From Oculina patagonica (Eukaryota), in NCBI RefSeq assembly GCF_052425735.1, contig NC_135761.1, positions 11,656,001-11,720,000 of the forward strand: DNA of 64,000 nt, written 5' to 3'. Positions 3,400-63,847 of this stretch are shown piece by piece. The notes under the pieces are model-generated. The model worked only from the letters and a program-made list of their open reading frames with translations, had not been told where the DNA came from and did no database searches. How positions within the stretch are numbered: the stretch's first letter is position 1; each line of letters opens with the position of its first letter. A program made the position numbers and the translations under genes.

Positions 3400-5929
3400 T
3401 CATACTATGCCATAGCATTTCCGTTTTTCCAGTGTGTGGTAACCTTGGTCACTACTGTTTGCATCCCCAAACCTCAGCTGTTTAACTGGAAGATGTGTCT
3501 TGTCAGTGAGGAGACCGCTGTCTTCACGCCACACCTTGTCATTCTTTTCACAGTTACAACCATAACTGGAGTCTGCACATGAGTTGGTCATCCCGCATGC
3601 GCACTTACCACTGCCAGGTGATGCCCCGCCCCAGTACGTCATCTTAGTAGAATCACGTGACACCCACCAGGCATATCCACGACCCACTGACACTGAATGG
3701 TAACACTCATACTTGATAAACTGTTCACAGTGTGAGGAGACTCTGGTAAGACTTGCAAGCTGGGAGAGACTCGCTCCTGTGTAATGGATGTCACGCGAGT
3801 AACAGCCTTGAGAGTGACATCCATTCACCAATGTTCTGCTTTCACTGTCGTGACTTATCACTGTCACACCGACTCCATTCTTGTCATTCATGTCGCAGTA
3901 AACTGTGAATGATGCCAGGCCTCCCACGCCATCTGGATCAATGACGTAGCTTCCGCTTACACTGCTGACATATTTTCTGATCACAGAACAACTGGAAGGC
4001 GTAGTAAACGGAGAATTAATTTGGACTTTAGCTTCTATTGTTGTCAGAGCATTAGTTGCTCTACAGGTGTAAGATCCTTCGTGTGATTTTTTAATGTTTG
4101 GAATAATCAGTGTTCCATTCAGAAGAACGTTGGACTCTACAGGAAGTGAAGACTTGCCATCCTTTTTCCAACTGATTGTAGTTCTCAGGTCACTCTCAGC
4201 CACACACGGAAGATGTACACTAGAACCAAACATAGAGGGAGTCACCTCTAGAGGAGGACGGACTTTGAACCGTAAACGAGAGAAAACCGTCAGTTGAGCG
4301 ATATCTGCTGCTGATCCCAGAATATTTTCTGCCTTACAAATGTATATTCCAGCGTTCTTTCGTGTCACACTGTAGATTGTCAGGGTTCCATTCATTATTT
4401 CATTTCGGTCTTCAGGCAAACTACTAACTGCTTTGGACCACGTGATACGAGGAAGCGGCTGACCAGAAGCAGTGCAGGCGATGGTGACGTTTTGTTTCTC
4501 TTCAGCCATCAATCGATTGGACGACAATGAAATTTCGGGAGGAACTATGGGAAAAATAGAAAATAAGATGATTTGTCCAAACAAACTCTTTTTACTGCAT
4601 ATTATTTTCACTGCTGTTGTTAGCTCTCTTGGTCAGGCATATTCCAACTTCAAGTTCTTCTGAAATTCCTTTTTTAATAACGTTCTCATATCATATTTTT
4701 GTCACAACTCTATCACAACATCATTAGCTGACAGCTATATCAAACGCTTTATGTTTTACAACATCCAGCTCTACTCTTTAACTGTAAATACATAAATTAA
4801 GCTACTTACATTGAACAGTTAATGTCGCCGAGGCATTCACTTGTCCCAGCAAATTTTCAGCTCTGCAGCTGTAAACTCCGCCGTCTCCAGGTCTAACGTC
4901 CTTCACAATCAGAGCGCCACTGGACTCTACCACGTGACGACCCACAGGAAGAGACGAATCCAGCTTAGACCACGTGCCCTTTGGACTTGGATTGCCATCC
5001 GCTGTACATTTCAAGATGGCTGTCTGACTTTCATTGACTGTCATTCCAACAGGACGCTGCAGCAGAGATGGAGCCGAGATGGACTGGCTCGGTTCACCTT
5101 TGACGCCTTTCATACCCGGCGGGCCTCTAGGTCCCACGGGACCGGGTTCTCCCGGCACTCCAATGTCTCCCTTTATGCCCATTGGTCCTTGAGCTCCTAT
5201 TGGTCCATGTTTACCAGGAGGTCCACTTGATCCGGGTTTCCCTGGGGGACCTGGTCTCCCTCGGGTTCCCGGTCTTCCTCGTCGTCCCATGTTACCTTTT
5301 GGTCCTGTGCGGCAGAGCGTGTGATCTTTAGCACAGACTTGGTTTTGCAGCAGACCAAGTTCTTGTTTGATCAGTATTTGTACTTCAGAGGCTGTTAGGA
5401 CTGCATTTTGTTGGAAATCATCAGGCGAAGAGCGTTTTTGTCTTGAGACTGTCTCTTCTTCACCTGAAAATTAAACTATTTATTTAAAAGCGAAACTGTG
5501 AATGCTAATTCTTTGACATTGGAGGGTTGCTAGTAAAAGAGATTTCCGTTTTCATTAGATTAGGTTTCAGCAACAAACCGTCTGCCTCGTTATTCATTTG
5601 TGTTAAGGAAAATTATAGACAAATGGCATGCAATCTTGGGTAAAATGTAGACGATTTGTACCACGATAATTGGCAATTATTGTTAAAGAAGTTAATACTG
5701 TTATACTTACTGTCTACTGCACTGCATTGCAGATACTAGTTTCATGACGAAACTTACCTTTGGTCCCTTGTGTGTACAGTCAATATCAGTCGATGATGTT
5801 CTTGTATTTTGAGTTCCACGTGAATTAGCGTGATACAACGCACAACAGACAACAGCAAGCCTGACGCGGAACACAAGCTGTTCAGTGTTTTTTTTTGTTC
5901 GTCTGCTTCTCTTCTTTATCTTGTTTCAT
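3400..5929 (-). pseudogene. Array copy C1: TM-collagen-3xIg-Caspr-type fibrinogen-like gene, exon 1 disrupted
   Basis: Exons 5758-5929, 4810-5463 and 3400-4544 with GT-AG phase-1 introns. Exon 1 has a -1 in a T-run (~5888-5896) giving [15 protein letters not shown], plus a 101-bp deletion with a 12-bp filler (5771-5782). Exons 2 and 3 are open. Confidence 0.75.
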
Positions 5930-10898: not shown

Positions 10899-12678
10899 AA
10901 CTGCGACTCTTTAACGACACAAAAAGCACCAAACTTAACTTGACGCCAATTTGCCATGATGACTTCATGTCGTTATTACTTCATATAACAGATGCTTACG
11001 CTACCGTATGACACATTCTTTGTACTTTTTAACGTGTCAAAAAAGTTAGTTATTCAATGTTTCGAATAAATTAACTCGATGCTATAACTGGGACTGAGTA
11101 CTTCTCTATGACAAAATAAAATGTCGTAAGTAAATAATTGTTTAATTCTTTTTTAATTCGATAAAATGTTTAGCCTGAAACATAAACTGAAGCTTTTATT
11201 TTATATTTTCAATTCCCGTTTCTAGATATCTGTTGCTTCTCAACTGAAAGCATATTGACTATCATTATTATTTCAAATACTGGGCTTGCAGTAAATTTAG
11301 AGGACAACAAATTAACATGTTCCTTTATGCTATGCCATAGCATTTCAGTTTTCCCAGTGAGTGGTAACCATACTGGTTGCTACTGCTCGTATCGCCAAAC
11401 CTCAGCTGTTTAACTGGCAGATGTGTCTTGTCAGTGAGGAGACCGCTGTCTTCACGCCATACATAGTCATTTGCATCACAGTTACAGCCATAACTGGGGT
11501 TTGCGCATGAGTTAGTCATCCCGCATGCGCACTTACCACTGCCAGGTGATGCTCCGCCCCAGTACGTCATCTTAGTAGAATCACGTGACACCCACCAGGC
11601 ATTTACCCCGTACCCCCAACATCACAGAACCATGACACTCGTACTTGATAAACTGTTCACAGTGCGAGGAGACTCTGGTGAGACTTGCAAGCTGGGAAAG
11701 ACTTGATCCTGTATAATGGATGTCACGAGAGTAACAGCCTTGATGTTGACATCCATCCACCAATGTTCTGCTTTCACTGCCGTGACTTATCACTGTCACG
11801 CCGATTCCATTCTTGTCACTCATGTCACAGTAAACAGTAAATGGTGCCAGGCTTCCCGCGCCATCTGGATCAATGACGTAATTCCCGCTTACACTACAAA
11901 CGTATTTTCTTATCACAGAGCAGGAAGTCGTAATAACTGGAGAATTGATTTTGACTTTAGCTTCTATTAACACCAGAGGATTAGTCGCCCTACAGGTGTA
12001 AGATCCTTCGTGTGATTTCTTGATGTTCTGAATAAACAGTGTTCCATTAAGTAGAACATTGGACTCTACAGGAAGTGAAGACTTGCTATCCTTGAACCGC
12101 AGTGGAGAGAATATTACAACTAGGGCAGTGTTCGTAGCTGATCCCATAATATTCTCTGTCTTACAAATGTATATTCCAGCGTCCTTTCTTGTCACGCTGT
12201 AGATTGTCAAAATTCCATTCATCACTTCAGTTCTGTCTTTAGGCAAACTACCGACTGACTTAGTCCACGTGATACTAGGAAACGGCCTACCAGTAGCAGT
12301 GCAGGCGATGGTGACGTTTTGTTTCTCTTCAGCCATCAATCGATTGGATGACAATGAAAGTTGAGGAGGAACTGTCGAAAAATAAAGAAATTGTGATGAT
12401 TTGCCCAAACAAACTTTTGTTACATTTTATTTCCTCTGCTGTTGTAGCCTCTCTTAGACAGCCATATTCCAACTTCAAATGTTATTGGCTTATTTGTGAG
12501 AAGTAGTCAATTTAAACACAGAACTAAAGATATGTTTAGCGATGATCGAAGTTCTTCTGAAATTCCGTTTTGGTCATGTTCACATGTCACATTTTTTCAA
12601 ATATTTATCACAACTTCTTCAGCTGAACGTCAGCTATGTCAAACGCTTAATGTTTTACAATAAAATACATAAATTAAG

Positions 12679-22376: not shown

Positions 22377-25300
22377 TTATACTATGCCATAGCATTTCAG
22401 TTTTCCCAGTGTGTGGTAACCTTGGTTACTTCCGCCTGCATCACCAAACCTCAGCTGTTTAACTGGCAGATGTGTCTTGTCAGTGAGGAGACCGCTGTCT
22501 TCACGCCACACTTTGTCATGCTTATCACAGTTACAACCACACCTGGGGTTTGCACATGAGTTGGTCATCCCGCATGCGCACTTACCACTGCCAGGTGATG
22601 CTCCGCCCCAGTACGTCATCTTACTAGAATCACGTGATACCCACCAGGCAAATCCCCCGTGCCCCAACATCATCGAATCATAACACTCGTACTTGATAAA
22701 CTGTTCACAGTGCGAGGAGATTCTGGTGAGACTTGCAAGCTGGGGCAGACTTGCTCCTGTGTACCGAATGTTACGTGAGTAACAGCCTTGAGGGTAGCAT
22801 CCATCCACCAATGTTCTGCTCTCACTGTCGTGACTTATCACTGTCACGCCAACTCCATTCTTGTCATTCATGTCGCAGTAAACTGTAAATGGTGCCAGCC
22901 CTCCCGAGCCATCTGGATCAATGACGTAATTTCCGCTTACACTGCTGATGTATTTTCTGATCACAGAGCAGGAAGTCCCAACTGGAGAATTGATTTTGAC
23001 TTTAGCTTCTATTGTTGTCAGAGCATTAGTCGCTCTACAAGTGTAAGATCCTTCGTGTGATTTCTTGATGTTCTGAATAACCAGTGTTCCATTTAGTAGA
23101 AAGCTGGACTCTACAGGAAGTGAAGACTTTCCATCTTTTGTCCAACTGATTGTAGTTCTCAGGTCACTCTCGGCCACACACGGCAGATGAACACTTGAAC
23201 CAATCACAGGAGTCACCTCTTGAGGAGGACGGACTTTGAACTGCATTGGAGAGAATATCACAACCTGGGCAGTGTTTGTTGCTGATCCCAGAATATTTTC
23301 TGCTTTACAAATGTATATTCCAGCGTCCTTTCGTGACACACTGTAGATTGTCAGGGTTCCATTTATCACTTCAGTTCTGTGTTCAGGCAAACTACCGACT
23401 GCTCTGTACCACATGATACTGGGAAGCGGCTGACCAGCAGCAGTGCAGGCGATGGTGACGTTTTGTTTCTCTTCAGCTATCAATCGATTGGATGACAATG
23501 AAAGTTCAGGAGGAACTATGAGAAAAAGAAAATTAAGATAATTGTCCAACCAAACTTGTGTTACATTTTATTTTGTCTGCTGTTGTAACCTCTCTTAGAC
23601 AGTCATATTCCAACTTCAAATATTATTAGTCAGGTGGCTTAACGCAAAATAAAGGCTTGATCGTGACAAGAGTGATAAAAGCGTGAAATTTGGCATACAA
23701 CTTGCTTACACCCTACTAAATAATATTAGAAGGGGTGCCCAAGTGAATCTGCTCACGATTCCGTTTTAAGGGGATATTTAGTCAAAACCGGCAAAATGAC
23801 TGGCGCCCAGGCTTCTCTCGTCCATCGAAGATGGCGGCGCTCTTGCCATTCTGCTGTCTTTGTAAGTTTTTGAAGAAAATGTTTTAACTTCTTCGGAAAT
23901 TTGTTAAAATTATATGCAGAGCATAAAAATAAACACTTGTTTTATCCATTAAAATGGTTTTAATCCTGTTTTGAGTTAAATCATTTGACATGTATAGAAA
24001 TGCTCCTGTTCGAGTTCGACTACTATAATTACTTGCAAAAAATTTCGGATGTTTACTTTTGGACACTTTTTGTCTTATTTCGAACAATTTCCGACAAAAT
24101 TTGCGGACACTAAAGTATGGCTTATCTAATTTAATTTACACATACAAAACAGGAACTACACTTAAACAACATCTGTGAAAAATGTTATTTAACTGCACTC
24201 TCAAGTCTTTACGTTCTCGAGAAGTCTCTCCACTAGAGTTCGCTCCATAACAAAGATAAAAAATTAAAAAAAATTGAGCTTAAGGTTGCTTCAATGACTG
24301 CGGCAAGATCTTGGAAAAGATCTTCTGCTTCTAGTTTAATTTCTTGGTAAACTCCTCCAAAATTCCTGCCAATTAAAAAATTTTTTCGTATGATATATTG
24401 TGTCTGTTTCTGAGGTCACAGGCGGAACAAACCAAAAAGCCAGCTAGTGTGAATGGGCTTCATTACTGATAACTTACTGCTGACATCAATCACAATGGAG
24501 TATACATGCATAACCACTATGCATCAATACCTTAATCGACTTGCTTTGCGACTGTAAACACTGGTGTTTGCATAATGGGCGGGCTGGGGGGTGTTGTTTG
24601 TGGGGTGGTAAGGAGGAGCAGGTTTTGTTTTTGTTTTAAAGATCAGATCTTTACCATTGAAGCCTTAATTCGGGGAATTTATTTTAAACTCTGGACAATG
24701 TAAAAACAATGCGTGGATGGCATTACATCTTTTTCTCTAGATAAAACGGTGAGGCCCTAGATATTTATACAGTTTTAAGCATTTGGTAATATATCAGTTT
24801 AGCACACGATCCCACAAGCATTGTGCTTAAAACCCTTATTGTGTTTAAATAAAGGATATGATGATGATGATGACTTTGAACAATCCCCGGTGCGTCTTCT
24901 TTGCTGATTCTTCAGAAACAATGATCTTGAATTTACCATGACGGTGATTTTTCGTTGACGCAAGCACTTTCGCCGAGTCATGTTCTTTTGAATTTTGTCA
25001 AGTTTGACACACTTTTTGGAAGATCCCATTTTCTGGGCATAAATCATGCCGTTTAAAATGTACAAAAATAACAAAAGTAACATATGCAGGTCCATAGAGA
25101 CAAACACCGTAGAAGTTAATGAAGACTGAAAACAAAAGCCTACTAGATAATAGTTTAGTGAGCTCACTAGAAAAATAGTTCTCGGCACAGAGTGATAAGA
25201 AAAATCAGAAAGTCTTCCATTCTCGCCAGGAGCACAGTGACAGACCCGTTAGAGAATGCAATAGTTTAACACTACAGCGCACGCAGAAATAGGGTATGAG

Positions 25301-30908: not shown

Positions 30909-32519
30909 TTACGCTGTACCATAGCATTTTAGTTTTCCCAGTGTGTGGTAACCATGGTCCCAACTGCCTATATCTCCGAACCTCAGCTGTTTAACTGGAA
31001 GATGTGTCTTGTCAGTGAGGAGACCGCTGTCTTCACGCCATACTCTGTCTTGCTTATCACAGTTACAACCAAACCTGGAGTCTGCACATGAGTTGGTCAT
31101 CCCGCATGCGCACTTACCACTCCCAGGTGATGCTCCGCCCCAGTACGTCATGTTACTTGAATCACGTGACACCCACCAGGCATATACCCCGTACCCCAAC
31201 ATCACTGAACCATAACACTCATATTTGATAAACTGTTCACAGTGCGAGGAGACTCTGGTGAGACTTGCAAGCTGGGACAGACTCGTTCCTGTATAATGAA
31301 TGTCACGCGAGTAACAGCCTTTATTGTAACATCCATTCACCAATGTTCTGCTTTCACTGTCGTGACTTACCACTGTCACGCCGACTCTATTCTTTTCATT
31401 CATGTCACAGTAAACTGTAAATGGGAGATGAATTTAGCTTGGACCACGTGACTTTTGGACTTGGATTACCATCCGCTGTACATTTCAAGATGGCTGTCTG
31501 ACTTTCATTGACTGTCATTCCAACAGGACTCTGCAGTAGAGATGGAGCCAAGATGGACTGGCCCGGTTCACCTTTGACGCCTTTCAAACCCGGCGGGCCT
31601 CTAGGTCCCACCGGACCGAGATCTCCTGGAACTCCAACATCCCCCTTTATTCCTATCGGTCCTTGTGCCCCTATTGGTCCATGTTTACCAGGAGTTCCAG
31701 TTGTCCCAGTTCTCCCTGGGGGACCTGGTCTCCCTCGGGTTCCCGGTCTTCCTCGTCGTCCCGTGTTACCTTTTGGTCCTGCGCGGCAGAGCGTGTAATC
31801 TTTAGCACAGACTTGGTTTTGCAGCAGACCAAGTTCTTGTTTGATCAGTACTTGCACTTCAGAGACTGTTAGGGTTGATTTCTGCTGTGAATCATCAGGT
31901 GCAAATCGCTTCTGTCTTGAGATGGTCTCTTCTTCAGCTGAAAAATTAAAGCTTTTATTCAATTCTTTGAGCAGTTGTTATGATGCAACAGGAGAAAATA
32001 AGGGGACTTATTTCTCTTGGATGCAATAATCATACGTATTATTAAAAGAGATTTCCGTTTCCATTAGACTGGGTTTCAGCAACATACCGCCACTGTATTT
32101 CGCATTCATTATTTTTCGGAAAAAACGTTGTACTAACGATAAATGGCAGGCAACCCTGGGTAAAGACGACGATCAGGGCGCACAACGTTAATTGTCAATG
32201 ATTATAGAAGGACGTGTACTATTGCAAAAACCCGTTCCATAGCGAAACAATACTCACCTTTGGTCCCTTGCCAATGGCGGCCTGTATACATAACTTGCCA
32301 TCTGCCGTAATTTTGTTGTACTTTTCGAAGGATATTTGTCTCCATCTTATCACAGAATGTTACTGATTGTGATATCATTCGATGATGTTCTTGTATTCTG
32401 AGTTCCACGTGAATTAGCGCGATACAACACACAACAGACAACAGCAAGCCTGACGCGGAACACAAGCTGTTCAGTGTTTGTCTTCTGCTTGTCTGCTTCT
32501 CTTCTTTATCTTGTTTCAT
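30909..32519 (-). pseudogene. Array copy C4, internal deletion fusing exon 2 to exon 3
   Basis: Exon 1 at 32258-32519. Exon 2 runs from 31937 to ~31425 (WSKLNSS) and is joined directly to the fibrinogen-like region (PFTVYC), out of frame by one base. Intron 2, half of Ig1, Ig2 and Ig3 are lost. Confidence 0.8.
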
Positions 32520-42705: not shown

Positions 42706-45158
42706 TTACGCTATACCATAGCATTTCAGTTTTCCCAGTGTGTGGTAACCCTGGCCACGACTGCCTGTATCGCCAAACCTCAGCTGTTTAACTGGCAGAT
42801 GTGACTTGTCAGTAAGGAGACCGCTGTCTTCACGCCATATCCAGTCATTCTTATCACAGTTACAACCATAACCGGGGTCTGCACATGAGTTGGTCATCCC
42901 GCATGCGCACTTACCACTGCCAGGTGATGCTCCGCCCCAGTACGTCATCTTAGTAGAATCACGTGACACCCACCATGCATATCCCCTACTTACTGTCACC
43001 GAATCATAACACTCGTACTTGATAAACTGTTCACAGTGTGAGGAGACTCTGGTGAGACTCGCAAGCTGGGACAGACTCGCTCCTGTGTAATGAATGTCAC
43101 GAGAGTAACTACCACGACTGCCATAACCTTTCACGTACGTTCTGCTTTCACTGTCGTGACTTATCACTGTCACGCCAACTCCATTCTTGTCATTCATGTC
43201 ACAGTAAGCTGTAAATGGTGCCAGGCCTCCCGCGCCATCTGGGTCAATGACGTAATTTCCGCTTACACTGCTGATGTCTTTTCTTATCACAGAACAACTG
43301 GAAGGCGCAGTAACAGGAGACTTTATTTTGACTTTAGCTTCTATTGTTGTCAGAGCATTAGTCGCTCTACAGGTGTAAGATCCTTCGTGTGATTTCCTTA
43401 TCTTCTCAATAACCAGTGTTCCATTCAGTAGAACATTGGACTTTACAGGAAGTGAAGACTTTCCATCCTTTGTCCAAGTGATTGTAGTTCTCAGGTCACT
43501 CTCGGCCACACACGAAAGATAAACACTGGAACCAAACATAAAGGGAGTCACCTCTTGAGGAGGACGGACTTTGAACCGCAAACAAGAAAATATCATGAGT
43601 TGAACAGTGTTTGTTGCTAATCCCAGAATATTTTCTGCTCTACAAATGTATGTTCCACCATCCTTTCTTTTCACACTGTAGATTGTCAGGGTTCCATTTA
43701 TCACTTCACTTCTGTCTTCAGGCAAACTACCGACTGACTTAGACCACATGATACTAGGAAGCGGCTGACCAGTAGCAGTGCAGGCGATGGTGACGTTTTG
43801 TTTCTCTTCAGCCATCAATCGATTGGATGACAATGAAAGTTGAGGAGGAACTGTCGAGAAATAGAAAATTATGATGATTTTCCCAAACGCACTTTTCCTA
43901 TATTAGCTTATAGTTATTTTCCCCACTATTGTAGCCTTGCTTCGACAGGTGTATTCCGACTTTGAATATTATTGATGAGAATTATTCAGTTAAAACACCG
44001 GACTAAGATATTTTTTAGTGTTGATCGAAGTTGTTCTCAAATTCCTCTTTACGTAATATCCGGTAATATTCTCATATCATGTTAGGTGAAGTCTATATCA
44101 AATTCTACTCCTAAACCGTAAATACATGAATTCAGCTACTTACACTGAACAGTTAATTTTGCCGAGGCATTCACTTGTCCCAGCAAATTTTCAGCTCTAC
44201 AGCTGTAAACTCCGTAGTCTCCAGGTCTAACGTCCTTCACAATCAGAGCGCCACTGGACTCTACCACGTGATGATCCACAGAGAGAGACGAATTCAGCTT
44301 AGACCACGTGACTTTTGGAGTTGGATTACCATCCGCTGTACATTTCAAGATGGCTGTCTGACTTTCATTGATTGTCATTTCAACAGGACGCTGTAGCAGA
44401 GATGGAGCCGAGATGGACTGACCTGGTTCACCTTTGACGCCTTTCATACCCGGTGGGCCTCTAGGTCCCACGGGACCCGGATCTTCCGGCACTCCAACAT
44501 CCCCCTTTATTCCCATTGGTCCTTGAGCTCCTATTGGTCCATGTTTACCAGGAGGTCCGTTTGACCCGGGTCTCCCTGAGGGGCCTGGTCTTCCTCGGGA
44601 TCCCGGTCTTCCTCGTCTTCCCGTGTTACCTTTTGGTCCTGTGCGGCAGAGTGTGTGATCTTTAGCACAGATTTGGTTTTGCAGCAGACCAACTTCTCGT
44701 TTGATCAGTTCTTGTACTTCAGAGGCTGTTAAGGTTGATTTTTGTTGTGAATCATCGGGCAAAGAACGTTCTTGTCTTGAGATGGTCTTTTCTTCTCCTG
44801 AAAAATTAGATTAAAAACTTGTAAACTGTCTAAACTGTGAATCCTGATTGTTTGACATTCGATGGTTACGAGTAAATGAGATTTCAGTTCCCATTAGATC
44901 AGGTTTCAGCAACATACCGTCACCATCGTTATTTCGTTTTTTATTCGTATACATAAAAATTGTAGAGAAATGGCAGAATGTTACTGAATGACAGAATGTT
45001 ACTGAGTGTGATATCATTCGATGATGTTCTTGTATTCTGAGTTCCACGTGAATTAGCGCGATACAACACACAACAGACAACAGCAAGCCTGACGCGGAAC
45101 ACAAGCTCTTCAGTGTTTGTCTTCTGTTCGTCTGCTTCTCTTCTTTATCTTGTTCCAT
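42706..45158 (-). CDS. Array copy C5: exons 2-3 intact, exon-1 donor deleted (pseudogene or rescued by a cryptic donor)
   Basis: Exon 3 42706-43850, exon 2 44144-44797, ATG at 45158. A ~210-bp deletion relative to C7 removes the end of exon 1 and its donor. A phase-1 cryptic donor ACG/GTATGT lies at 44918/44917. Confidence 0.6.
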
Positions 45159-52871: not shown

Positions 52872-55539
52872 TTAAGCTTTGCCATAACATTTCAGTTTTC
52901 CCAGTATGTGGTAACCTTGCTGGGCGCTACTATTCCATGTATCTCCAAACCTCAGCTGTTTAACTGGAAGATGTGTCTTGTCAGTGAGGAGACCGCTGTC
53001 TTCACGCCATACATAGTCATTTGCATCACAGTTACAACCATAACTGGGGTCTGCACATGAGTTGGTCATCCCGCATGCGCACTTACCACTGCCAGGTGAT
53101 GCACCGCCCCAGTACGTCATCTTACTTGAATCACGTGACACCCACCAGCCATATCCCCCGTACCTGAACATCACTGAACCAACACACTCATATTTGATAA
53201 ACTGTTCACAGTGTGAGGAGACCCTGGTGAGGCTCGCAAGCTGAGACAGACTCGCTCCTGTGTAATGAATGTCACGTGAGTAACTACCAGCACCGCTATA
53301 CCCATTTACGTGCGTTCTGCTTTCACTGTCGTGACTAATCACTGTCACGCCAACTCCATTCTTGTCACTCATGTCACAGTTAACTGTAAATGGTGCCAGG
53401 CCTTCCGCGCCATCTGGATCAATGACGTAATTTCCGCTTACACTGCTGACGTATTTTCTGATCACAGAACAGGAAGTCGCAATAACTGGAGAATTGATTT
53501 TGACTTTAGCTTTTATTGTTGTCAGAGCATTAGTCGCTCTACAGGTGTAAGATTCTTCGTGTGATTTCTTGATGTTTTTAATAACCAGTGTTCCATTTAG
53601 TAGAAAGCTGGATTCTACAGGAAGTGAAGACTTGCCATCCTTTGTCCAAGTGATTGCAGTTCTCAGGTCACTCTCGGCCACACACGGCAGATGAACACTT
53701 GAACCAATCACAGGAGTCACCTCTTGAGGAGGACGGACTTTGAACCGCAAACGAGAAAATATTATGAGTTGAACAGTGTCTGTTGCTAATCCCAAAATAT
53801 TTTCTGCTCTACAAATGTATGTTCCAGCGTCTTTTCTTGTTACACTGTAGATTGTCAGGGTTCCATTCATCACTTCAGTTCTGTCTTCAGGCAAACTACC
53901 AACTGACTTGGCCCACGTGATACTGGGAAGCGGCTGACCTGTAGCAGTGCAGGCGATGGTGACGTTTTGTTTCTCTTCAGCCATCAATCGATTGGATGAC
54001 AATGAAAGTTGAGGAGGAACTGTCGAGAAATAGAGAACAAGATCATTTGGCCAAGCGCACTATTATGTTTATTTTCCTTTTTATTCTCCTTGTTACCTTA
54101 CTTTATCAGGTGTGCTCCGACTTATGCTTTGCCCTTTAGATCAAGAGACTTCACAGTTTTTAATGTTGATCGAAATTCTTCTTAGCCTTCTTAAATTCCT
54201 TTATCGCTACAACTATAGAAACATACTAAATTGACGACTGTATCAAGAGATTTATCTTTCGAAAGGACCTGTTTGACAGGATCAACTTCTACACTTTAAA
54301 CCGCAAAATACACAAAATAAGCTACTTACACTGAACAGTTAGTCTCGCCGAGGCATTTACTTTTCCCAATAAATTTTCAGCTCTGCAGCTGTAAACGCCG
54401 TTGTCTCCAGGTCTAACGTCCTTCACAATCAGAGCGCCACTGGACTCTACCACGTGACGACCCACAGGAAGCGACGAATTAAACTTAGACCACGTGACTT
54501 TTGGACTTGGATTACCATCTACTGTACATTTCAAGATGGCTGTCTGACTTTCATTAACTGTCATTTCAACAGGGCGCTGCAGCAGAGATGGAGCCGAGAT
54601 GGACTGGCCCGGTTCACCTTTGAAGCCTTTCATACCCGGCGGGCCTCTAGGTCCCACGGGACCAGGATCTCCTGGCGTTCCAATATCCCCTTTTATGCCC
54701 ATCGGTCCTGGAGCTCCTATTGGTCCATGTTTACCAGGAGGTCCGCTTGATCCGGGTCTCCCAGGGGGACCTGGTTTCCCTCGGGTTCCCGGTCGTCCCC
54801 GTCGTCCCGTGTTACCTTTTGGTCCTGTGCGGCAGAGCGTGTGATCTTTAGCACAGACTTGGTTTTGCAGCAGACCAAGTTCTTGTTTGATCATTACTTG
54901 TACTTCAGAGGCTGTTAGCGTTGATTTCTGTTGGGAATCATCGGGCAAAGAACGTTCTTGTCTTGAGATGGTCTTTTCTTCTCCTGAAAAATTAGATTAA
55001 AAAATCGTAAACTGTCTAAACTGTGAATCCTGATTGTTTGACATTCGATGGTTACGAGTAAATGAGATTTCCGTTCCCATTAGATCAGGTTTCACCAACA
55101 TACCGTCACCATCGTTATTTCGTTTTTTTATTCGTATACAGAAAAATTGTAGAGAAATGGCATGTAATCTTGGGTGAAGTGTAGACGACTCGCATCACAA
55201 TAATTGGCAATAATTATCGAAGAAATTATGCTTAAATATAGTTATACTGTCTACTGTACTAAAATGGCGAAACTTACCTTTGGAGGCTTGCCAATAGCGG
55301 CCTGTAGCCATAACTTGCCATCTGCCGTAATTTTGTTGTACTTTTCGAAGGATTTCTGTCTCCATCTTATCACAGAATGTTACTGAGTGTGATATCAGTC
55401 GATGATGTTCTTGTATTCTGAGTTCCACGTGAATTAGCTCGATACAACACACAACAGACAACAGCAAGCCTGACGCGGAACACAAGCTGTTCAGTGTTTG
55501 TCTTGTGTTCGTCTGCTTCTCTTCTTTATCTTGTTTCAT
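52872..55539 (-). CDS. Array copy C7: intact type II TM collagen-3xIg-Caspr-type fibrinogen-like protein (~687 aa)
   Basis: Exons 55278-55539, 54330-54983 and 52872-54019; phase-1 GT-AG introns; 2064 nt in frame. RQER site; Ala-to-Glu change in the TM (CCIELIH). Confidence 0.85.
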
Positions 55540-56745: not shown

Positions 56746-59339
56746 TTATGCTGTGCCATAGCATTTTAGTTTTCCCAGTGTGTGGTAACCTTGCTGACCG
56801 GCATAACCAGATGCATCCCCAAACCTCAGCTGTTTAACTGGAAGATGTGTCTTGTCAGTAAGGAGACCGCTGTCTTCGCGCCATACATTGTCATTCTTAT
56901 CACAGTTGCAACCATACCTGGAGTCTGTACATGAGTTGGTCATCCCGCATGCGCACTTACCACTGCCAGGTGTTGCTCCGCCCCAGTACGTCATCTTACT
57001 AGAATCACGTGACACCCACCATGCTTTCGCTCCATTGAATATTCTTGAACCATGACACTCATACTTGATAAACTGTTCACAGTGTGAGGAGACTCTGGTG
57101 AGCCTTGCAAGCTGAGATAGACTCGCTCCTGTGTAATGAATGTCACGAGAGTAACTACCAGCACCGCTATACCCATCCACGTGCGTTCTGCTTTCACTGT
57201 CGTGACTAATCACTGTCACGCCAACTCCACTCTTGTCACTCATGTCACAATAAACTGTAAATGGTGCCAGGCCTCCCGCGCCATCTGGATCAATGACGTA
57301 ATTTCCGCTTACACCGCTAACGTATTTTCTTATCACGGTACAGGAAGTCATAATAACTGGAGTATTGATTTTGACTTTAGCTTCTATTGACACCAGAGGA
57401 TTAGTCGCTCTACAGGTGTAAGATCCTTCGTGTGATTTCTTGATGTTCTGAATAAACAGTGTTCCATTCAGTAGAACATTGGACTCTACAGGAAGTGAAG
57501 ACTTGCCATCCTTTGACCAAGCGATTGTAGGTTTCAGGTCACTCTCGGCCACACACGGCAGATGAACACTTGAACCAATCACAGGAGTCACTTCTTGAGG
57601 AGGACGGACTTTGAACCCTAAGCGAGAGAATATCATGACCAGAGCAGTGTCTGTTGCTACTCCAAGAGTATTCTCTGCCTTACAGATATATATTCCACCG
57701 TCCTTTCTTGTCACACTGTAGATTGTCAGGGTTCCATTCATCACTTCAGTTCTGTCTTCAGGCAAACTACCGACTGACTTAGTCCACGTGACACTAGGAC
57801 GCGGCTGACCAGTAGCAATGCAGGCGATGGTGACGTTTTGTTTCTCTTCAGCCATCAATCGATTTTTGAATGAAAGTTGAGGAGGAACTGTCGAAAAATA
57901 AAGAAATTGTGATGATTTGCCCAAACACTCTTTTGTTACATTTGATTTTCTCCGCTGATGTGCATAATTCCGACTTTAAATGTTATCGATGAGACTTAGA
58001 CAATTAGAACCCAGGACTAAACATATTTTTTGTGTTGATCGAAGTTCTTCTGAAATTTCTTTTTTGGTAATATTGTCATATCATATTTCTCAACAACTAT
58101 CATTTTTCTTTCGAAAGGGACTGTTTTATTAAAGCATACAACCTACCCCTAAACCGTTAAATACATAAATTCAGCTACCGTACTTACAATGAACAGTTAA
58201 TTTCGCCGAGGCATTCACTCGTCCCAACAAATTTTCAGCTTTGCAGCTGTAAATTCCGTCATCTCCAGGTCTAACGTCCTTCACAGTCAGAGCGCCACTG
58301 GACTCTACCACGTGACGACCCACAGGAAGTGATGAATTCATCTTAGACCACGTGACTTTTGGACTTGGATTACCATCCGCTGTACATTTCAAGATGGCTG
58401 TCTGACTTTCATTGACTGTCATTCCAACAGGACGCTGCAGCAGAGATGGAGCCGAGATGGTCTGGCCCGGTTCACCTTTGTCGCATTTCAAACCCGGCGG
58501 ACCTCTAGGTCCCACGGGACCGGGATCCCCTGGCACTCCAACATCCCCTTTCATTCCCATTGGCCCTTGAGCTCCTATTGGTCCATGTTTACCAGGAGGT
58601 CCGCTTGACCCGGGTTTCCCTGGGGTACCTGGTCTCCCTCGGGTTACCGGTCTTCCTCGTCGTCCCGCGTTACCTTTTGGTCCTGTACGACAGAGCGTGT
58701 GATCTTTAGCACAGACTTGGTTTTGCAGCAGACCAAGTTCTTGTTTGATCAGTATTTGTACTTCAGAGGCTGTTAGGGTTGATTTTTGTTCTGAATCTTC
58801 AGGTGAAGAGCGCTTTTGTCTTGAATTTTTTTCTTCTCCACCTGAAAAATTAGAGCCAATTATTCAAAATCGTAAACCATGAACCATTCTTTGACAATTA
58901 ACGGTTGCTATGATGCAATAATACAACCTGGATTCAGCAACACAGCTTCAGCCCCCTTATTTCGCATTCATTTGTTTCGGGGATACTAAAGATAAATAGC
59001 AGGCACCCTGAGTAAAGACGACGAGCAAAACGCACAACATTTTGCAATGATTACAGAAGAACGTAAACAATGCTCACCTTTGGTCCCTTTCCAATGGCGG
59101 CCTGTAGCTATAACTTGCCATCTGCCGTAATGTTGTTGTACTTTTTGAAGGATTGCTGTCTCCATCTTATCACAGAATGTTACTGAGTGTGATATCAGTC
59201 GATGATGTTCTTGTATTCTGAGTTCCACGTGAATTAGCGCGATACAACACACAACAGACAACAGCAAGCCTGACGCGGAACACAAGCTGTTCAGTGTTTG
59301 TCTTCTGTTCGTCTGCTTCTCTTCTTTATCTTGTTTCAT
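56746..59339 (-). CDS. Array copy C8: intact type II TM collagen-3xIg-Caspr-type fibrinogen-like protein (~685 aa)
   Basis: Exons 59078-59339, 58188-58841 and 56746-57887; 2058 nt in frame; RQKR site; one Gly-to-Cys change in the collagen. Confidence 0.85.
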
Positions 59340-61817: not shown

Positions 61818-63847
61818 TTACGCTGTACCATAGCATTTTAGTTTTCCGAGTGAGTGGTAACCTTGGTTCCAACTGCCTATATCTCCGAACCTCAGCTGTT
61901 TAACTGGCAGATGTGTCTTGTCAGTGAGGAGACCGCTGTCTTCACGCCATACTCCGTCTTGCTTATCACAGTTACAACCATAATTGGAGTCTGCACATGA
62001 GTTGGTCATCCCGCATGCGCACTTACCACTGCCAAGTGATGCTCCGCCCCAGTACGTCATCTTACTGGAATCACGTGACACCCACCAGGCATATACCCCG
62101 TACCCCAACATAACAGAACCATAACACTCATACTTGATAAACTGTTCACAGTGTGAGGAGACCCTGGTGAGGCTTGCAAGCTGGGACAGACTCGCTCCTG
62201 TATACTGAATGTCACGCGAGTAACAGCCTCGAGAGTGACATCCATCCACCAATGTTCTGCTTTCACTGTCGTGACTTATCACTGTCACACCGACTCCATT
62301 CTTGTCATTCATGTCACAGTAAACTGTAAATGGTGCCAGGCCTCCCGCGTCATCTGGATCAATGACGTAATTTCCGCTTACACTGCTGACATATTTTCTG
62401 ATCACAGAACAACTGGAAGGCGCAGTAACAGGAGAATTGATGTTTGCTCTGGCTTCTATTGTTGTCAGAGCATTGGTCGCTCTACAAGTGTAAAATCCTT
62501 CATGCGATTTCTTTATCTTCTCAAAAACCAGTGTTCCATTCAGTAGAACATTGGATTCTACAGGAAGTGAAGACTTTCCATCCTTGGTCCAAGTAATTGT
62601 AGTTCTCAGGTCACTCTCGGCCACACACGGTAGAGAAACACTTGAACCAAACATAGCGGGAGAGACCTCTTGAGGAGGACGGACTTTGAACCGCAGAGGA
62701 GAGAATATCACTACTTGAGCAGTGTTTGTTGCTGATCCCAGAATATTCTCTGCCTTACAGATGTATATTCCAGCGTCCTTTTTTGTCACACTGTAGATTG
62801 TCAGGGTTCCATTCATCACTTTAGTTCTGTATTCAGGCAAACTCCCAACTGACTTGGACCACGTGACACTAGGACGCGGCTGACCAGTAGCAGTGCAGGC
62901 GATGGTGACGTTTTGCTTTTCTTCAGCCATCAATCGATTGAATGATAGTAAAAGATGAGGAGAAACTATCGAGAAATAGAGAAATTATGATGATTTTGCC
63001 AAACACACTTTTGTTACATTTTATTTTCACTGCTGTTGTAGCCTTTCTTGAAAAGGTGTATAACAACTTGAAATATTATGTTGATGGGACTTAGTCAGTT
63101 AGAACACAGGTCAGTGTTGATCCCTGTGGTAAGATTGTCATATCGTAATCATATTTCCCAATAACTATGACAATATCACATTCTGCTACTTACATTGAAC
63201 AGTTAATTTCGCCGAAGCATTTATTTCTCCCAGCAAATTTTCAGCTCTGCAGCTGTAAACTCCTTCGTCTCCAGGTCTAACTTCCTTAACAATCACAGCG
63301 CCACTGGATTCTACCACGTGACGACCAACAGGGAGCGATGAATTCAGCTTAGACCAAGTGACTTTTGGACGTGGATTACCATCCGCTATACATTTCAAGA
63401 TGGCTGTCTGACTTTCATTGACCGTCATTTCAACAGGTCGCTGCAGCAGAGATGGAGCCGAGATGGACTGGCCCGGTTCACCTTTGACGCCTTTCATACC
63501 CGGCGGGCCTCTAGGTCCCACGGGACCGGTGTCTCCCATCATTCCAATATCCCCCTTTATGCCCATCGGTCCTTGTCCTCCTATTGGTCCATGTTTACCA
63601 GGAGGTCCGCTTGATCTGGGTTTCCCTTGGGGACCTGGTTTCCCTCGGGTTTCCGGTTTTCCTGGCCGTCCCGTGTTATCTTTTGGTCCTGTTCGGCAGA
63701 GCGTGTGATCTTTAGCACAGACTTGGTTTTGCAGCAGACCGAGTTCTTGTTTGATCACTACTTGTACTTCATATGCTGTTAGGGTTGATTTTTGTTGTGA
63801 ATCATCGGGCAAAGAACGTTCTTGTCTTGAGATGATCTCTTCTTCTC
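61818..63847 (-). CDS. Array copy C9, exons 2-3 (exon 1 beyond the window)
   Basis: Exon 2 63194-63847 and exon 3 61818-62965 are both open; RQER site; three Gly substitutions in the collagen. Confidence 0.8.

What the first reader, a model, noticed from the sequence alone, without database searches (positions are those of the whole stretch)
52872..53330. Four CDR-like hypervariable patches in an invariant fibrinogen-like framework
Seen, aligning C1-C9. Patch 1: LVNGCHSQGC / LVDGCQHQGC / [10 protein letters not shown] / LVNGCYNKGC / [10 protein letters not shown] / LVDGCSSQGC / [10 protein letters not shown] / [10 protein letters not shown] / LVDGCHSRGC. Patch 2 (after YEC): YHSVSVGRGYA / [12 protein letters not shown] / YGSVMLGYGVYA / [11 protein letters not shown] / [12 protein letters not shown] / [11 protein letters not shown]. 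Patch 3 surrounds GCNC (SSY, PRC, SRF, PGY, SWR; then KNDK, ANDY, KQDR, KNDW). Patch 4 (after FGD): ANSSD / TSSSNQY / AGGSN / IGSWD / TGSRG / TWNSSAQ / ASGYAGQ, with codon indels. The intervening stretches are nearly identical even at the DNA level. Inference: the Tyr/Trp/Ser/Gly/Arg-rich patches form one ligand-binding face under diversifying selection, like antibody or VLR paratopes. Coordinates are given for C7.
Basis: partly seen in the sequence, partly recalled or inferred. Interest (0 to 1): 0.85.

Follow-up and report, generated by a model that had tools for sequence, protein, structure and literature searches.

The report
Hypervariable loops on coral receptor heads
A stony-coral chromosome carries a large tandem family of membrane-anchored collagen-immunoglobulin proteins, and their conserved end domain has four surface loops that vary strongly between gene copies, are swapped between copies and are partly under selection to differ, which suggests an undescribed germline repertoire of recognition receptors.

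Summary
The window comes from a scleractinian coral, probably Oculina patagonica. It carries nine tandem minus-strand genes: seven intact, one frameshifted and one truncated. Each encodes a type II membrane anchor, a collagen stretch, three Ig domains and a 190-residue head.

The variation sits in four loops of the head, at C7 head residues 47-56, 90-101, 133-147 and 171-178. This also holds in 50 further paralogues (24 of the 25 most variable columns, p 2e-17), in two other head clusters and in 116 public coral homologues.

"Fibrinogen-like" is only a label. The head is the Caspr/neurexin-IV type domain (TM 0.9), and its fold resembles the procollagen C-propeptide petal, not ficolin or fibrinogen. 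"Nearly identical DNA" is overstated: framework nucleotide identity is 93% and synonymous difference 0.21-0.28.

Selection is supported only in part. Whole patches give dN/dS of about 0.8 against their own dS, and 1.35 against framework dS. A site-wise test that allows for recombination finds 8 codons with dN>dS, spread over all four patches, where 0.4 are expected under the null.

Patches move between paralogues as cassettes. Very young duplicates have identical patches, so nothing points to hypermutation.

Whether the loops form one binding face, and what they bind, could not be tested. The scan had already noted this family elsewhere in this genome.

The parts
55278..55539 (-). C7 exon 1: start codon, 17-residue cytoplasmic tail, hydrophobic anchor (protein residues 18-37), start of the stalk
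   Evidence: The joined CDS of three exons gives 687 codons with no internal stop. The donor is GTAAGT. The strongest hydrophobic 19-mer starts at residue 18. The exon is conserved upstream of 8 copies.
54330..54983 (-). C7 exon 2: stalk with an R-Q-E-R motif, 24 Gly-X-Y triplets (about 54607-54825), and Ig domain 1
   Evidence: Pfam Collagen E 5.6e-16 and I-set E 6.7e-20. Acceptor is CAG and donor GTAAGT, in phase 1.
52872..54019 (-). C7 exon 3: Ig domains 2 and 3, the head, and the stop codon
   Evidence: Pfam Ig_3 E 5e-31 with two stretches. The ORF is listed and the splice acceptor.
52875..53450 (-). C7 head domain, 192 residues: Caspr-type 'fibrinogen-like' domain with a COLFI-petal-like fold
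   Evidence: AF2 pLDDT 96.3. TM 0.9 to the Caspr/neurexin-IV domain. Foldseek E 4e-8 to procollagen C-propeptides, and TM 0.22-0.25 to fibrinogen-related domains.
53283..53312 (-). Patch 1 (head residues 47-56): hairpin loop in two forms, Cys-x4-Cys or Tyr-x4-Ser
   Evidence: Entropy peak. Lies in the loop between strands 46-48 and 57-60. Sites 49, 52 and 53 have P(dN>dS)>0.9. Columns 51 and 56 read C/C in 30 copies and Y/S in 24.
53148..53183 (-). Patch 2 (head residues 90-101): loop after the long strand 78-90, with codon indels
   Evidence: Entropy peak and gaps. Sites 91 and 100 have P>0.9. The C7 version is 95% identical to that of C6, against a median of 62%.
53010..53054 (-). Patch 3 (head residues 133-147): variable residues either side of the invariant G-C-N-C-D core
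   Evidence: Entropy peaks at 133-138, 143 and 146. Site 146 has the strongest signal (dN rate about 8-10 against dS rate 0.2-0.6, p 2e-4 to 6e-4). Site 137 also passes.
52917..52940 (-). Patch 4 (head residues 171-178): loop after F-G-D, with codon indels. The C7 version carries an N-S-S sequon.
   Evidence: Entropy peak and gaps. Site 175 has P>0.9. Lies in the loop between strands 165-168 and 178-191.
3403..3969 (-). C1 head, intact
11328..11901 (-). C2 head, broken by one extra G in a run of five G at 11613-11616, inside patch 2
   Evidence: Two tblastn pieces in different frames; sequence read.
22380..22949 (-). C3 head, intact. Its exon 2-3 intervening gap is about 3.8 kb.
30912..31424 (-). 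C4 head, lacking its first 19 residues. Exon 2 sequence abuts it out of frame, and Ig domains 2 and 3 are deleted.
42709..43275 (-). C5 head, intact (Tyr/Ser form of patch 1)
   Evidence: identical to P0036
46807..47376 (-). C6 head, intact
56749..57321 (-). C8 head, intact. Its patch 1 is nearly that of C7.
61821..62390 (-). C9 head, intact. It shares patches 2 and 4 with C4.

Best explanation
Each gene encodes a type II membrane protein. It has a short cytoplasmic tail, an anchor, a stalk, a collagen triple-helix stretch (so it is probably trimeric), three I-set Ig domains as a spacer, and a distal 190-residue head of the Caspr/neurexin-IV type.

The head core is held almost constant by purifying selection (dN/dS 0.13-0.15). 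Four loops carry nearly all the variation. The repertoire is encoded in the germline. The genome holds at least 150 heads (267 candidates), almost all with open frames.

The loops diversify in two ways:
- Selection for amino-acid change at a minority of loop positions. This is shown.
- Transfer of whole loop 'cassettes' between tandem paralogues by gene conversion or unequal exchange, which gives nearly every gene its own combination. The mosaicism is shown; the mechanism is inferred.

I infer that the loops are the specificity-determining surface of a family of recognition receptors for varied extracellular ligands, such as microbes, symbionts or other coral cells. The proteins would be displayed on the membrane and possibly shed.
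For: Gene model:
- Three exons, GT-AG introns, 687 codons.
- Collagen and Ig domains by Pfam.
- A hydrophobic anchor at residues 18-37.
- A JGI contig carries collagen, Ig1-3 and head as one uninterrupted frame across the position of the conserved intron. It is therefore a spliced mRNA of a family member.

Family size:
- 150 scored matches out of 267 candidates, only 7 with an internal stop.
- More than 3000 public homologues.

Loops:
- The entropy profile of 57 paralogues was replicated in 50 paralogues outside the window, in two other clusters and in 116 public homologues.
- All four patches lie between secondary-structure elements of a model with pLDDT 96.

Selection:
- Framework piN is 0.045 and piS 0.278. 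Patch piN is 0.349.
- At framework pS of 0.1-0.2, patch pN is 1.6-1.8 times framework pS.
- The site-wise grid test with its own synonymous rate per site gives 16 sites with one tree and 8 sites with segment trees, the latter all in patches.
- The null simulation gives 0.38 sites.

Shuffling:
- Four segment trees fit about 1000 lnL better than one tree, at a cost of about 360 parameters.
- In C7, patch 1 is nearest to C8, patch 2 to C6 and patch 3 to L004.
- Patch-to-patch Mantel r ranges from -0.09 to 0.41.
- There are 42, 50, 45 and 37 distinct peptides per patch, and 53 distinct combinations, in 57 genes.
Against: - Patch-wide dN/dS is below 1 against the patches' own synonymous differences (0.81). 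Most loop positions are therefore not demonstrably under positive selection.
- The selection test is my own implementation, run with fixed nucleotide trees. Recombination within segments is not modelled.
- No coordinates were available, so clustering of the loops on one face is not shown.
- No binding data, ligand or signalling partner is known, and the 17-residue tail has no recognisable motif.
- Expression evidence is at family level only. RNA-library contigs lie on the exons, but a run of unknown type shows much the same pattern.
- The trimer prediction gave no answer.
Confidence: 0.6

Rival explanations
1. The loops are simply unconstrained. They tolerate any residue and indels, drift neutrally, and look hypervariable only because the core is so conserved. 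No selection for diversity and no recognition role is involved.
For: - Patch-wide dN/dS is 0.64-1.26 by patch and 0.81-0.87 overall.
- Codon indels are tolerated.
- Synonymous differences are also raised in the patches.
Against: - Eight to sixteen codons have dN>dS, against 0.4 expected when the same sites are simulated as neutral at most.
- Patch dN exceeds framework dS by 1.35-1.8 times.
- Neutral drift on the same genealogy cannot make patch synonymous differences twice the framework's. The youngest duplicates show no excess of mutations in the patches: 7 changes against about 12 expected.
- About 95% of heads keep open frames.
Confidence: 0.2
2. The head acts like the procollagen C-propeptide it resembles. 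It nucleates trimer formation, and the variable loops are a chain-selection code (like the chain recognition sequence) that keeps hundreds of co-expressed collagenous paralogues from mixing, or controls how they mix.
For: - The best solved-structure matches are procollagen C-propeptide trimers (E 4e-8, TM 0.55-0.59; profile E 1.3e-5).
- The proteins carry a collagen stretch.
- In procollagens, a hypervariable discontinuous sequence in the petal governs chain choice (PMC5353611).
Against: - By the profile alignment the head starts at about C-propeptide residue 53. It therefore lacks the coiled-coil stalk and most of the base, including the cysteines of the inter-chain disulfide. Those parts make most of the collagen I interface.
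- The positions equivalent to the chain recognition sequence (head 62-67 and 78-80) are conserved here, and the long stretch is shortened by six residues.
- Patch 1 aligns with the loop on the outer face of the petal, which is not in the interface.
- The same head occurs in Caspr proteins and in lectin/EGF proteins that have no collagen.
- Three Ig domains separate the head from the collagen.
Confidence: 0.08
3. The loops mediate self or like-with-like recognition between coral cells or colonies. This would be an allorecognition or cell-identity code, as in clustered protocadherins, Dscam or Hydractinia Alr, rather than recognition of microbes.
For: - Membrane anchoring, Ig domains and large tandem arrays.
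- Conserved scaffolds with a few specificity loops, and conversion between neighbouring genes.
- Nothing in the data distinguishes foreign from self ligands.
Against: - No allelic or population data were examined.
- The cytoplasmic tail is very short.
- The same variable head is also joined to secreted architectures in other clusters, which fits soluble binders better than a cell-identity code.
Confidence: 0.1
4. A targeted mutational process, germline or somatic hypermutation aimed at the loops, creates the diversity.
For: Both synonymous and non-synonymous differences are raised in the patches.
Against: - Eight pairs of very young duplicates (framework pS below 0.05) carry 7 changes in the patches. 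About 12 would be expected at the framework's synonymous rate, and about 24 for a twofold hotspot.
- Differences between close pairs arrive as whole blocks, for example L002 against L021.
Confidence: 0.02

Closest known systems
Cnidarian ficolin-like proteins (CniFL; sea anemones; PMC5094078, PMC7654579)
   Same: The architecture is the same: transmembrane segment, collagen, usually three Ig domains, and a globular C-terminal head. Both are multi-copy in anthozoans and proposed as pattern-recognition receptors.
   Different: CniFLs are defined by a true fibrinogen domain (PF00147) and resemble ficolin-1. Here the head gives no PF00147 match and has a different fold. Copy number is 1-7 in anemone transcriptomes against at least 150 heads here. 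No hypervariable loops or cassette exchange are mentioned in the passages of the CniFL papers I read.
Fibrinogen-like domain of Caspr/CNTNAP/neurexin-IV
   Same: It is the same domain family: 38-43% identity and TM 0.9, 45-48% identity to invertebrate Caspr-architecture proteins, and shared invariant cysteines.
   Different: In Caspr proteins it is a single internal domain of a single-copy neuronal adhesion protein. Here it is the terminal head of a large diversified family.
Fibrillar procollagen C-propeptide (COLFI) and its chain recognition sequence
   Same: A remote homologue, and the best solved fold match for the petal region. It also combines a conserved scaffold with a short hypervariable specificity element.
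   Different: The head lacks the stalk and most of the base. The recognition-sequence positions are conserved here, and the variable loops lie elsewhere.
Mollusc FREPs, and lamprey VLR or antibody paratopes (from general knowledge)
   Same: Ig domains are joined to a distal lectin-like head (FREPs). Variation is concentrated in a few loops rich in Tyr, Ser and Gly, and diversity is assembled from cassettes (chicken Ig, VLR).
   Different: The head fold differs. The diversity seen here is germline, between paralogues. No somatic process is indicated.
Class A scavenger receptors (SR-A, MARCO) and collectin-12 (from general knowledge)
   Same: Type II membrane topology, stalk, collagenous region and a C-terminal recognition head.
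   Different: Those heads are SRCR or C-type lectin domains and the genes are single-copy. They have no Ig spacer and no hypervariable loops.

Membership tests
Caspr/neurexin-IV type fibrinogen-like domain | Sequence similarity to the domain between the EGF and third laminin-G domains of Caspr-architecture proteins | tested here: met
   phmmer hits P0258 (residues 600-788) and P0262 (590-779) are 45-48% identical. Both have F5/8-C, laminin-G and EGF domains.
Caspr/neurexin-IV type fibrinogen-like domain | Same fold | tested here: met
   TM 0.87-0.91 and rmsd 1.7-2.3 to that domain of neurexin-4, CNTNAP1, 2, 4 and 5.
Fibrinogen-related domain (Pfam PF00147; ficolin, FREP, CniFL heads) | Match to PF00147 at the gathering score | tested here: not met
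   The C7 head has no PF00147 match even at E 10. Relatives match only the first 50 or so residues, below or near the cut-off.
Fibrinogen-related domain (Pfam PF00147; ficolin, FREP, CniFL heads) | Fibrinogen C-terminal fold over the whole domain | tested here: not met
   Foldseek TM 0.22-0.26 and E 0.02-0.08, aligned over about 100-139 columns only.
COLFI (Pfam PF01410) | Match at the gathering score | tested here: not met
   The C7 head scores 12.4 bits against a cut-off of 26.2. Some relatives pass (P0001 at 59 bits), so this is remote homology rather than membership.
COLFI (Pfam PF01410) | Stalk and base that build the trimer (coiled coil, calcium site, inter-chain disulfide) | tested here: not met
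   The alignment starts at about C-propeptide residue 53, and the cysteines at 47 and 64 are absent (one search read against PMC5353611).
CniFL | Transmembrane segment, collagen repeats and Ig domains | tested here: met
CniFL | Fibrinogen domain PF00147 as head | tested here: not met
   definition taken from PMC5094078
Antibody/VLR-like variable receptor | Variation concentrated in a few loops of a constant scaffold | tested here: met
Antibody/VLR-like variable receptor | Loops form one contiguous binding surface | not testable with these tools
   Model coordinates are not exposed. The only hint is a patch 1 to patch 4 Mantel r of 0.41.
Antibody/VLR-like variable receptor | Somatic assembly or mutation | not tested
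   This needs reads from single individuals. The germline data give no sign of a hotspot.

The most novel reading that the evidence does not exclude
The array, including its broken copies, might serve as a cassette library. Conversion within an individual (somatic) or between haplotypes would then give each colony or cell its own receptor set. That would be a coral counterpart of chicken Ig or lamprey VLR diversification, or the long-sought coral allorecognition locus, built on a Caspr/COLFI-type fold.
Probability: 0.07. Interest if true: 0.95.

Novelty: new variant of a known kind. Interest (0 to 1): 0.7.

Why it matters
Corals have no adaptive immunity, yet they must sort symbionts, commensals, pathogens and neighbouring colonies. 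A membrane-displayed family of hundreds of genes, with diversity focused on four loops and recombined as cassettes, is the kind of receptor repertoire that could do this.

It uses a fold, the Caspr/procollagen-petal type, for which I found no paper in the searched library describing it as a variable recognition scaffold. It gives concrete, clonable candidates for binding and expression studies in a coral (Oculina) that is a laboratory model for Vibrio-induced bleaching.

It also shows that the CniFL-type architecture exists with a different head. Genome annotation currently hides this under names such as 'contactin-associated protein-like' or 'roundabout homolog'.

Tried and rejected
- Homotrimer prediction of the head. 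The result was 'no answer', which is evidence neither for nor against.
- Mapping the patches in three dimensions. The structure tool returns no coordinates, so only loop placement and a homology argument for patch 1 could be given.
- A global alignment of whole gene loci. It was spoiled by unequal intron lengths and was used only as a rough profile.
- Intron divergence as a neutral yardstick. The p-distance was 0.24 and a shuffled control gave 0.32, so the aligner barely separates introns from noise. The 3' flank comparison failed outright. I therefore did not claim exon-specific homogenisation.
- RNA evidence from public runs. No run holds more than 0.3 of the words. RNA-library contigs lie on exons and not introns, but so do those of a run of unknown type. 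The one intron-like joint is 6 bases off the donor. This is weak family-level support only.
- PDB sequence search with the single head found nothing useful; the profile search was needed.
- Literature searches for this coral family under contactin-associated, COLFI, hypervariable and similar terms found no description. The original CniFL paper (tried as PMC4586855) is not held in the library.
- Reading the head as a ficolin-type domain was rejected.
Full report
**What is in the window.**
The window has about 40% G+C and interrupted genes, so it is eukaryotic. The nearest named proteins are from Oculina patagonica and other stony corals. One protein of the window is found on a 64.4-Mb contig shared with named Oculina proteins. 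The window lies at C4:11,656,001-11,720,000 of a 529-Mb assembly.

A tblastn search with the C7 pieces finds nine tandem copies, all on the minus strand. Eight of them have the upstream exon, the collagen-Ig exon and an Ig-Ig-head exon. In C4 the Ig-Ig part is deleted. Seven heads are intact. C2 carries one extra G in a run of five G at 11613-11616, inside patch 2. In C4, exon 2 sequence abuts residue 20 of the head out of frame, and Ig2-Ig3 are lost.

**Gene model.**
For C7, three exons (55539-55278, 54983-54330, 54019-52875, with the stop at 52872-52874) join through GTAAGT...CAG introns of 294 and 310 bases into 687 codons without a stop. The product has these parts:
- a 17-residue N-terminal tail;
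- a hydrophobic anchor at residues 18-37;
- a stalk;
- 24 Gly-X-Y triplets, matched by Pfam Collagen;
- three I-set Ig domains;
- a 192-residue head.

A 3-kb JGI contig encodes collagen, Ig1, Ig2, Ig3 and head in one uninterrupted frame, across the place where all window copies have a phase-1 intron. Members of the family are therefore transcribed and spliced as modelled.

Contigs of coral RNA libraries lie on the three exons and not on the introns. A run of unknown type behaves alike, and the one intron-like joint is 6 bases off the donor. I count this only as weak support.

**The observation.**
I enlarged the sample to test it. The genome has at least 150 heads among 267 candidates, and only 7 have an internal stop. 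They lie in a cluster of about 1.1 Mb around the window and in further clusters on several chromosomes.

I aligned 57 intact, non-identical heads at 79-100% identity to C7. Entropy is near zero over most of the domain. It peaks at head residues 47-54, 90-101, 133-138 with 143 and 146, and 171-178.

- The same holds for 116 public coral homologues, with 21 of 25.
- It holds for a cluster on contig C14, with 21 of 25.
- It holds less sharply for a cluster at C4:59.8-60.2 Mb, with 14 of 25. Heads in both of these clusters lie in short open frames of about 210-260 residues, unlike the roughly 390-residue Ig-Ig-head frames here.

Framework nucleotide identity among window copies is 92.8% (range 89.8-94.7), with synonymous difference 0.21-0.28, so it is not near-identity. 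At hypervariable sites Tyr is enriched 2.15-fold and Arg 1.7-fold, Ser and Gly only 1.2-fold, and Trp is depleted.

**What the head is.**
Pfam gives the C7 head only a sub-threshold COLFI match (E 0.098) and no fibrinogen match. An exhaustive phmmer search finds 2167 clusters. These include Caspr-architecture proteins (F5/8-C, four laminin-G, EGF) with the homologous domain at residues 590-790 and 45-48% identity.

An AlphaFold model built from 70 diverse homologues has pLDDT 96.3. Its matches are:
- the 'fibrinogen-like' domain of neurexin-4 and CNTNAP1-5, with TM 0.87-0.91;
- among solved structures, procollagen C-propeptide trimers, with E 4e-8 and TM 0.55-0.59;
- fibrinogen, FGL1 and MFAP4, with only TM 0.22-0.26 over the first 100-139 columns.

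A profile search agrees, giving collagen I C-propeptide at E 1.3e-5 and fibrinogen beta at 0.012. 'Fibrinogen-like' is thus a historical label. The head is a Caspr-type domain related to the petal of the procollagen C-propeptide.

All four patches lie in loops:
- between strands 46-48 and 57-60;
- after strand 78-90;
- around helix 140-143;
- between strands 165-168 and 178-191.

**Selection.**
Nei-Gojobori counts over all pairs of the 57 heads give these values:

| Region | piN | piS | dN/dS |
|---|---|---|---|
| Framework | 0.045 | 0.278 | 0.13 |
| Patches | 0.349 | 0.403 | 0.81 |

Patch dN divided by framework dS is 1.35. The nine-copy figures are similar. Taken whole, the patches do not exceed 1 against their own synonymous differences.

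Because the synonymous rate differs between regions, I wrote a FUBAR-like test. It uses MG94 with F3x4 frequencies and fixed nucleotide trees, a 16 by 16 grid of synonymous and non-synonymous rates per site, empirical-Bayes weights, and a grid likelihood-ratio test.

- With one tree, 16 sites have P(dN>dS) above 0.9, and 15 of them are in the patches.
- With separate trees for four segments, 8 sites remain: C7 residues 49, 52, 53, 91, 100, 137, 146 and 175. At least one lies in every patch.
- Five of these also pass the likelihood-ratio test at 0.05. Residue 146 is the strongest.

I then simulated the same sites on the same trees with dN capped at dS. That gives 0.38 sites above 0.9 and 1.1 sites at p below 0.05 per data set, over eight replicates.

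Diversifying selection is therefore supported for a minority of loop positions, not for each patch as a block. The caveats are that the code is mine, the trees are fixed, and recombination within segments is ignored. For comparison, Ig2-Ig3 have dN/dS of 0.43 with diffuse variation.

**Cassette exchange.**
Four segment trees fit about 1000 log-likelihood units better than one tree, for about 360 more parameters.

C7 is a mosaic. Its overall nearest paralogue is 91% identical. Its patches relate to other copies as follows:

| C7 patch | Nearest copy | Identity | Median identity |
|---|---|---|---|
| 1 | C8 | 94% | 64% |
| 2 | C6 | 95% | 62% |
| 3 | L004 | 94% | 81% |
| 4 | no close relative | - | - |

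This agrees with another first-reader note on the same stretch.

Distance matrices of the four patches are almost uncorrelated with each other and with the framework (Mantel r -0.09 to 0.41). The highest value links patches 1 and 4, which are the furthest apart in sequence. That may hint at contact in the fold.

The 57 genes carry 42, 50, 45 and 37 distinct peptides in the four patches, and 53 distinct combinations.

Binning pairs by framework synonymous difference is informative:
- The eight youngest pairs have almost identical patches: 7 changes where about 12 are expected at the framework's synonymous rate. There is no sign of a mutational hotspot.
- At framework pS of 0.1-0.2, both patch pN (0.22-0.32) and patch pS (0.29-0.37) are about twice the framework's.
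- Some close pairs differ by whole blocks. L002 and L021 have framework pS of 0.06 but 35 patch differences.

The simplest reading is that loop variants are older than the genes that now carry them, and are moved about by conversion while the core evolves under strong constraint. This is inference from pattern. Tract sizes and direction were not measured.

**How it probably works.**
Shown:
- the membrane-anchored architecture, with collagen and three Ig domains;
- a conserved head with four variable loops;
- germline diversity;
- mosaicism;
- positive selection at some loop sites.

Inferred:
- trimerisation through the collagen stretch and stalk;
- display of three heads at the end of an Ig spacer;
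- loops acting as the ligand-binding surface;
- possible shedding at an R-Q-K/E-R motif between anchor and collagen;
- a role in recognising microbes, symbionts or other coral cells.

**Rivals.**
- *Neutral loops.* This fits the aggregate dN/dS but not the site results, nor patch dN exceeding framework dS.
- *A chain-selection code like the procollagen chain recognition sequence.* The fold makes this attractive. However, the head aligns from about residue 53 of the C-propeptide and lacks the stalk and most of the base. The recognition-sequence positions (head 62-67 and 78-80) are conserved. Patch 1 aligns with the outer petal loop that is not in the interface. The head also occurs without collagen.
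- *A self-recognition or cell-identity code.* This cannot be separated from recognition of foreign ligands with these data.

**Comparison with what is known.**
Sea-anemone CniFL proteins have the same layout of transmembrane segment, collagen, three Ig domains and a head. They are defined by a true fibrinogen domain and are ficolin-like, with 1-7 copies per transcriptome. The present family is a head-swapped, greatly expanded counterpart.

I found no paper describing it. Public annotation calls its members contactin-associated protein-like, neurexin-4-like or roundabout homolog.

The scan itself had already noted arrays of this and related head families elsewhere in this genome. One follow-up on a PAN-plus-head array likewise found the immune role unproven.

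**Verdict.**
The feature is real and statistically solid. It is a new variant of a known kind, the diversified invertebrate recognition-receptor families. Its scaffold is unusual, and there is clear evidence of loop shuffling. The binding-face and ligand claims remain open.

Noticed in passing
window 53283-53312 and the same columns in 57 paralogues: Patch 1 exists in two exclusive forms: Cys at head positions 51 and 56 (30 genes), or Tyr and Ser (24 genes). There are no mixed pairs apart from one Phe/Ser. This suggests a small disulphide-closed loop against an open one.
   Followed up: partly
window 11613-11616 (C2): A single extra G in a run of five G breaks the frame inside patch 2. The copy is either a true pseudogene or the run is a homopolymer error of the assembly. 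A named Oculina protein (P0015) matches the flanks and reads through this spot.
   Followed up: partly
window 30912-31899 (C4): Exon 2 sequence (up to residue 159 of the query ORF, within Ig domain 1) abuts residue 20 of the head out of frame. A deletion of about 1.2 kb removed Ig2 and Ig3. The patches of this copy are nearly those of C9.
   Followed up: partly
window 54940-54983 (C7 exon 2 start); also P0015 and P0052: An R-Q-K-R motif (R-Q-E-R in C7) lies between the membrane stalk and the collagen stretch. It fits the minimal furin pattern, so the ectodomain may be shed, as in vertebrate membrane collagens. Another first-reader note says the same.
   Followed up: no
G000:C4:10923065, 11054027, 11155133 (L026, L024, L025): Three heads about 100-130 kb apart share an internal TGA at the same codon (110). 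This points to recent duplication of a large block that already carried a dead copy.
   Followed up: no
G000 contig C14 23.1-24.1 Mb and C4 59.8-60.3 Mb (L061-L100): Dozens more heads, 65-70% identical to C7, lie in short open frames of about 210-260 residues (so probably behind other N-terminal domains). They vary at the same four loops. Public relatives join the head to C-type lectin plus EGF, to PAN, or to Xlink-CUB-SRCR domains.
   Followed up: partly
window 52917-52940 (C7) and the C1 patch 4: Patch 4 of C7 and C1 contains an N-S-S glycosylation sequon that other copies lack. Glycan presence may be part of the variation.
   Followed up: no
patch 1 and patch 4 columns, 57 paralogues: The two patches furthest apart in sequence have the highest correlation of distances (Mantel r 0.41). 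Patch 3 correlates with neither of them. This may reflect co-adaptation of touching loops.
   Followed up: no
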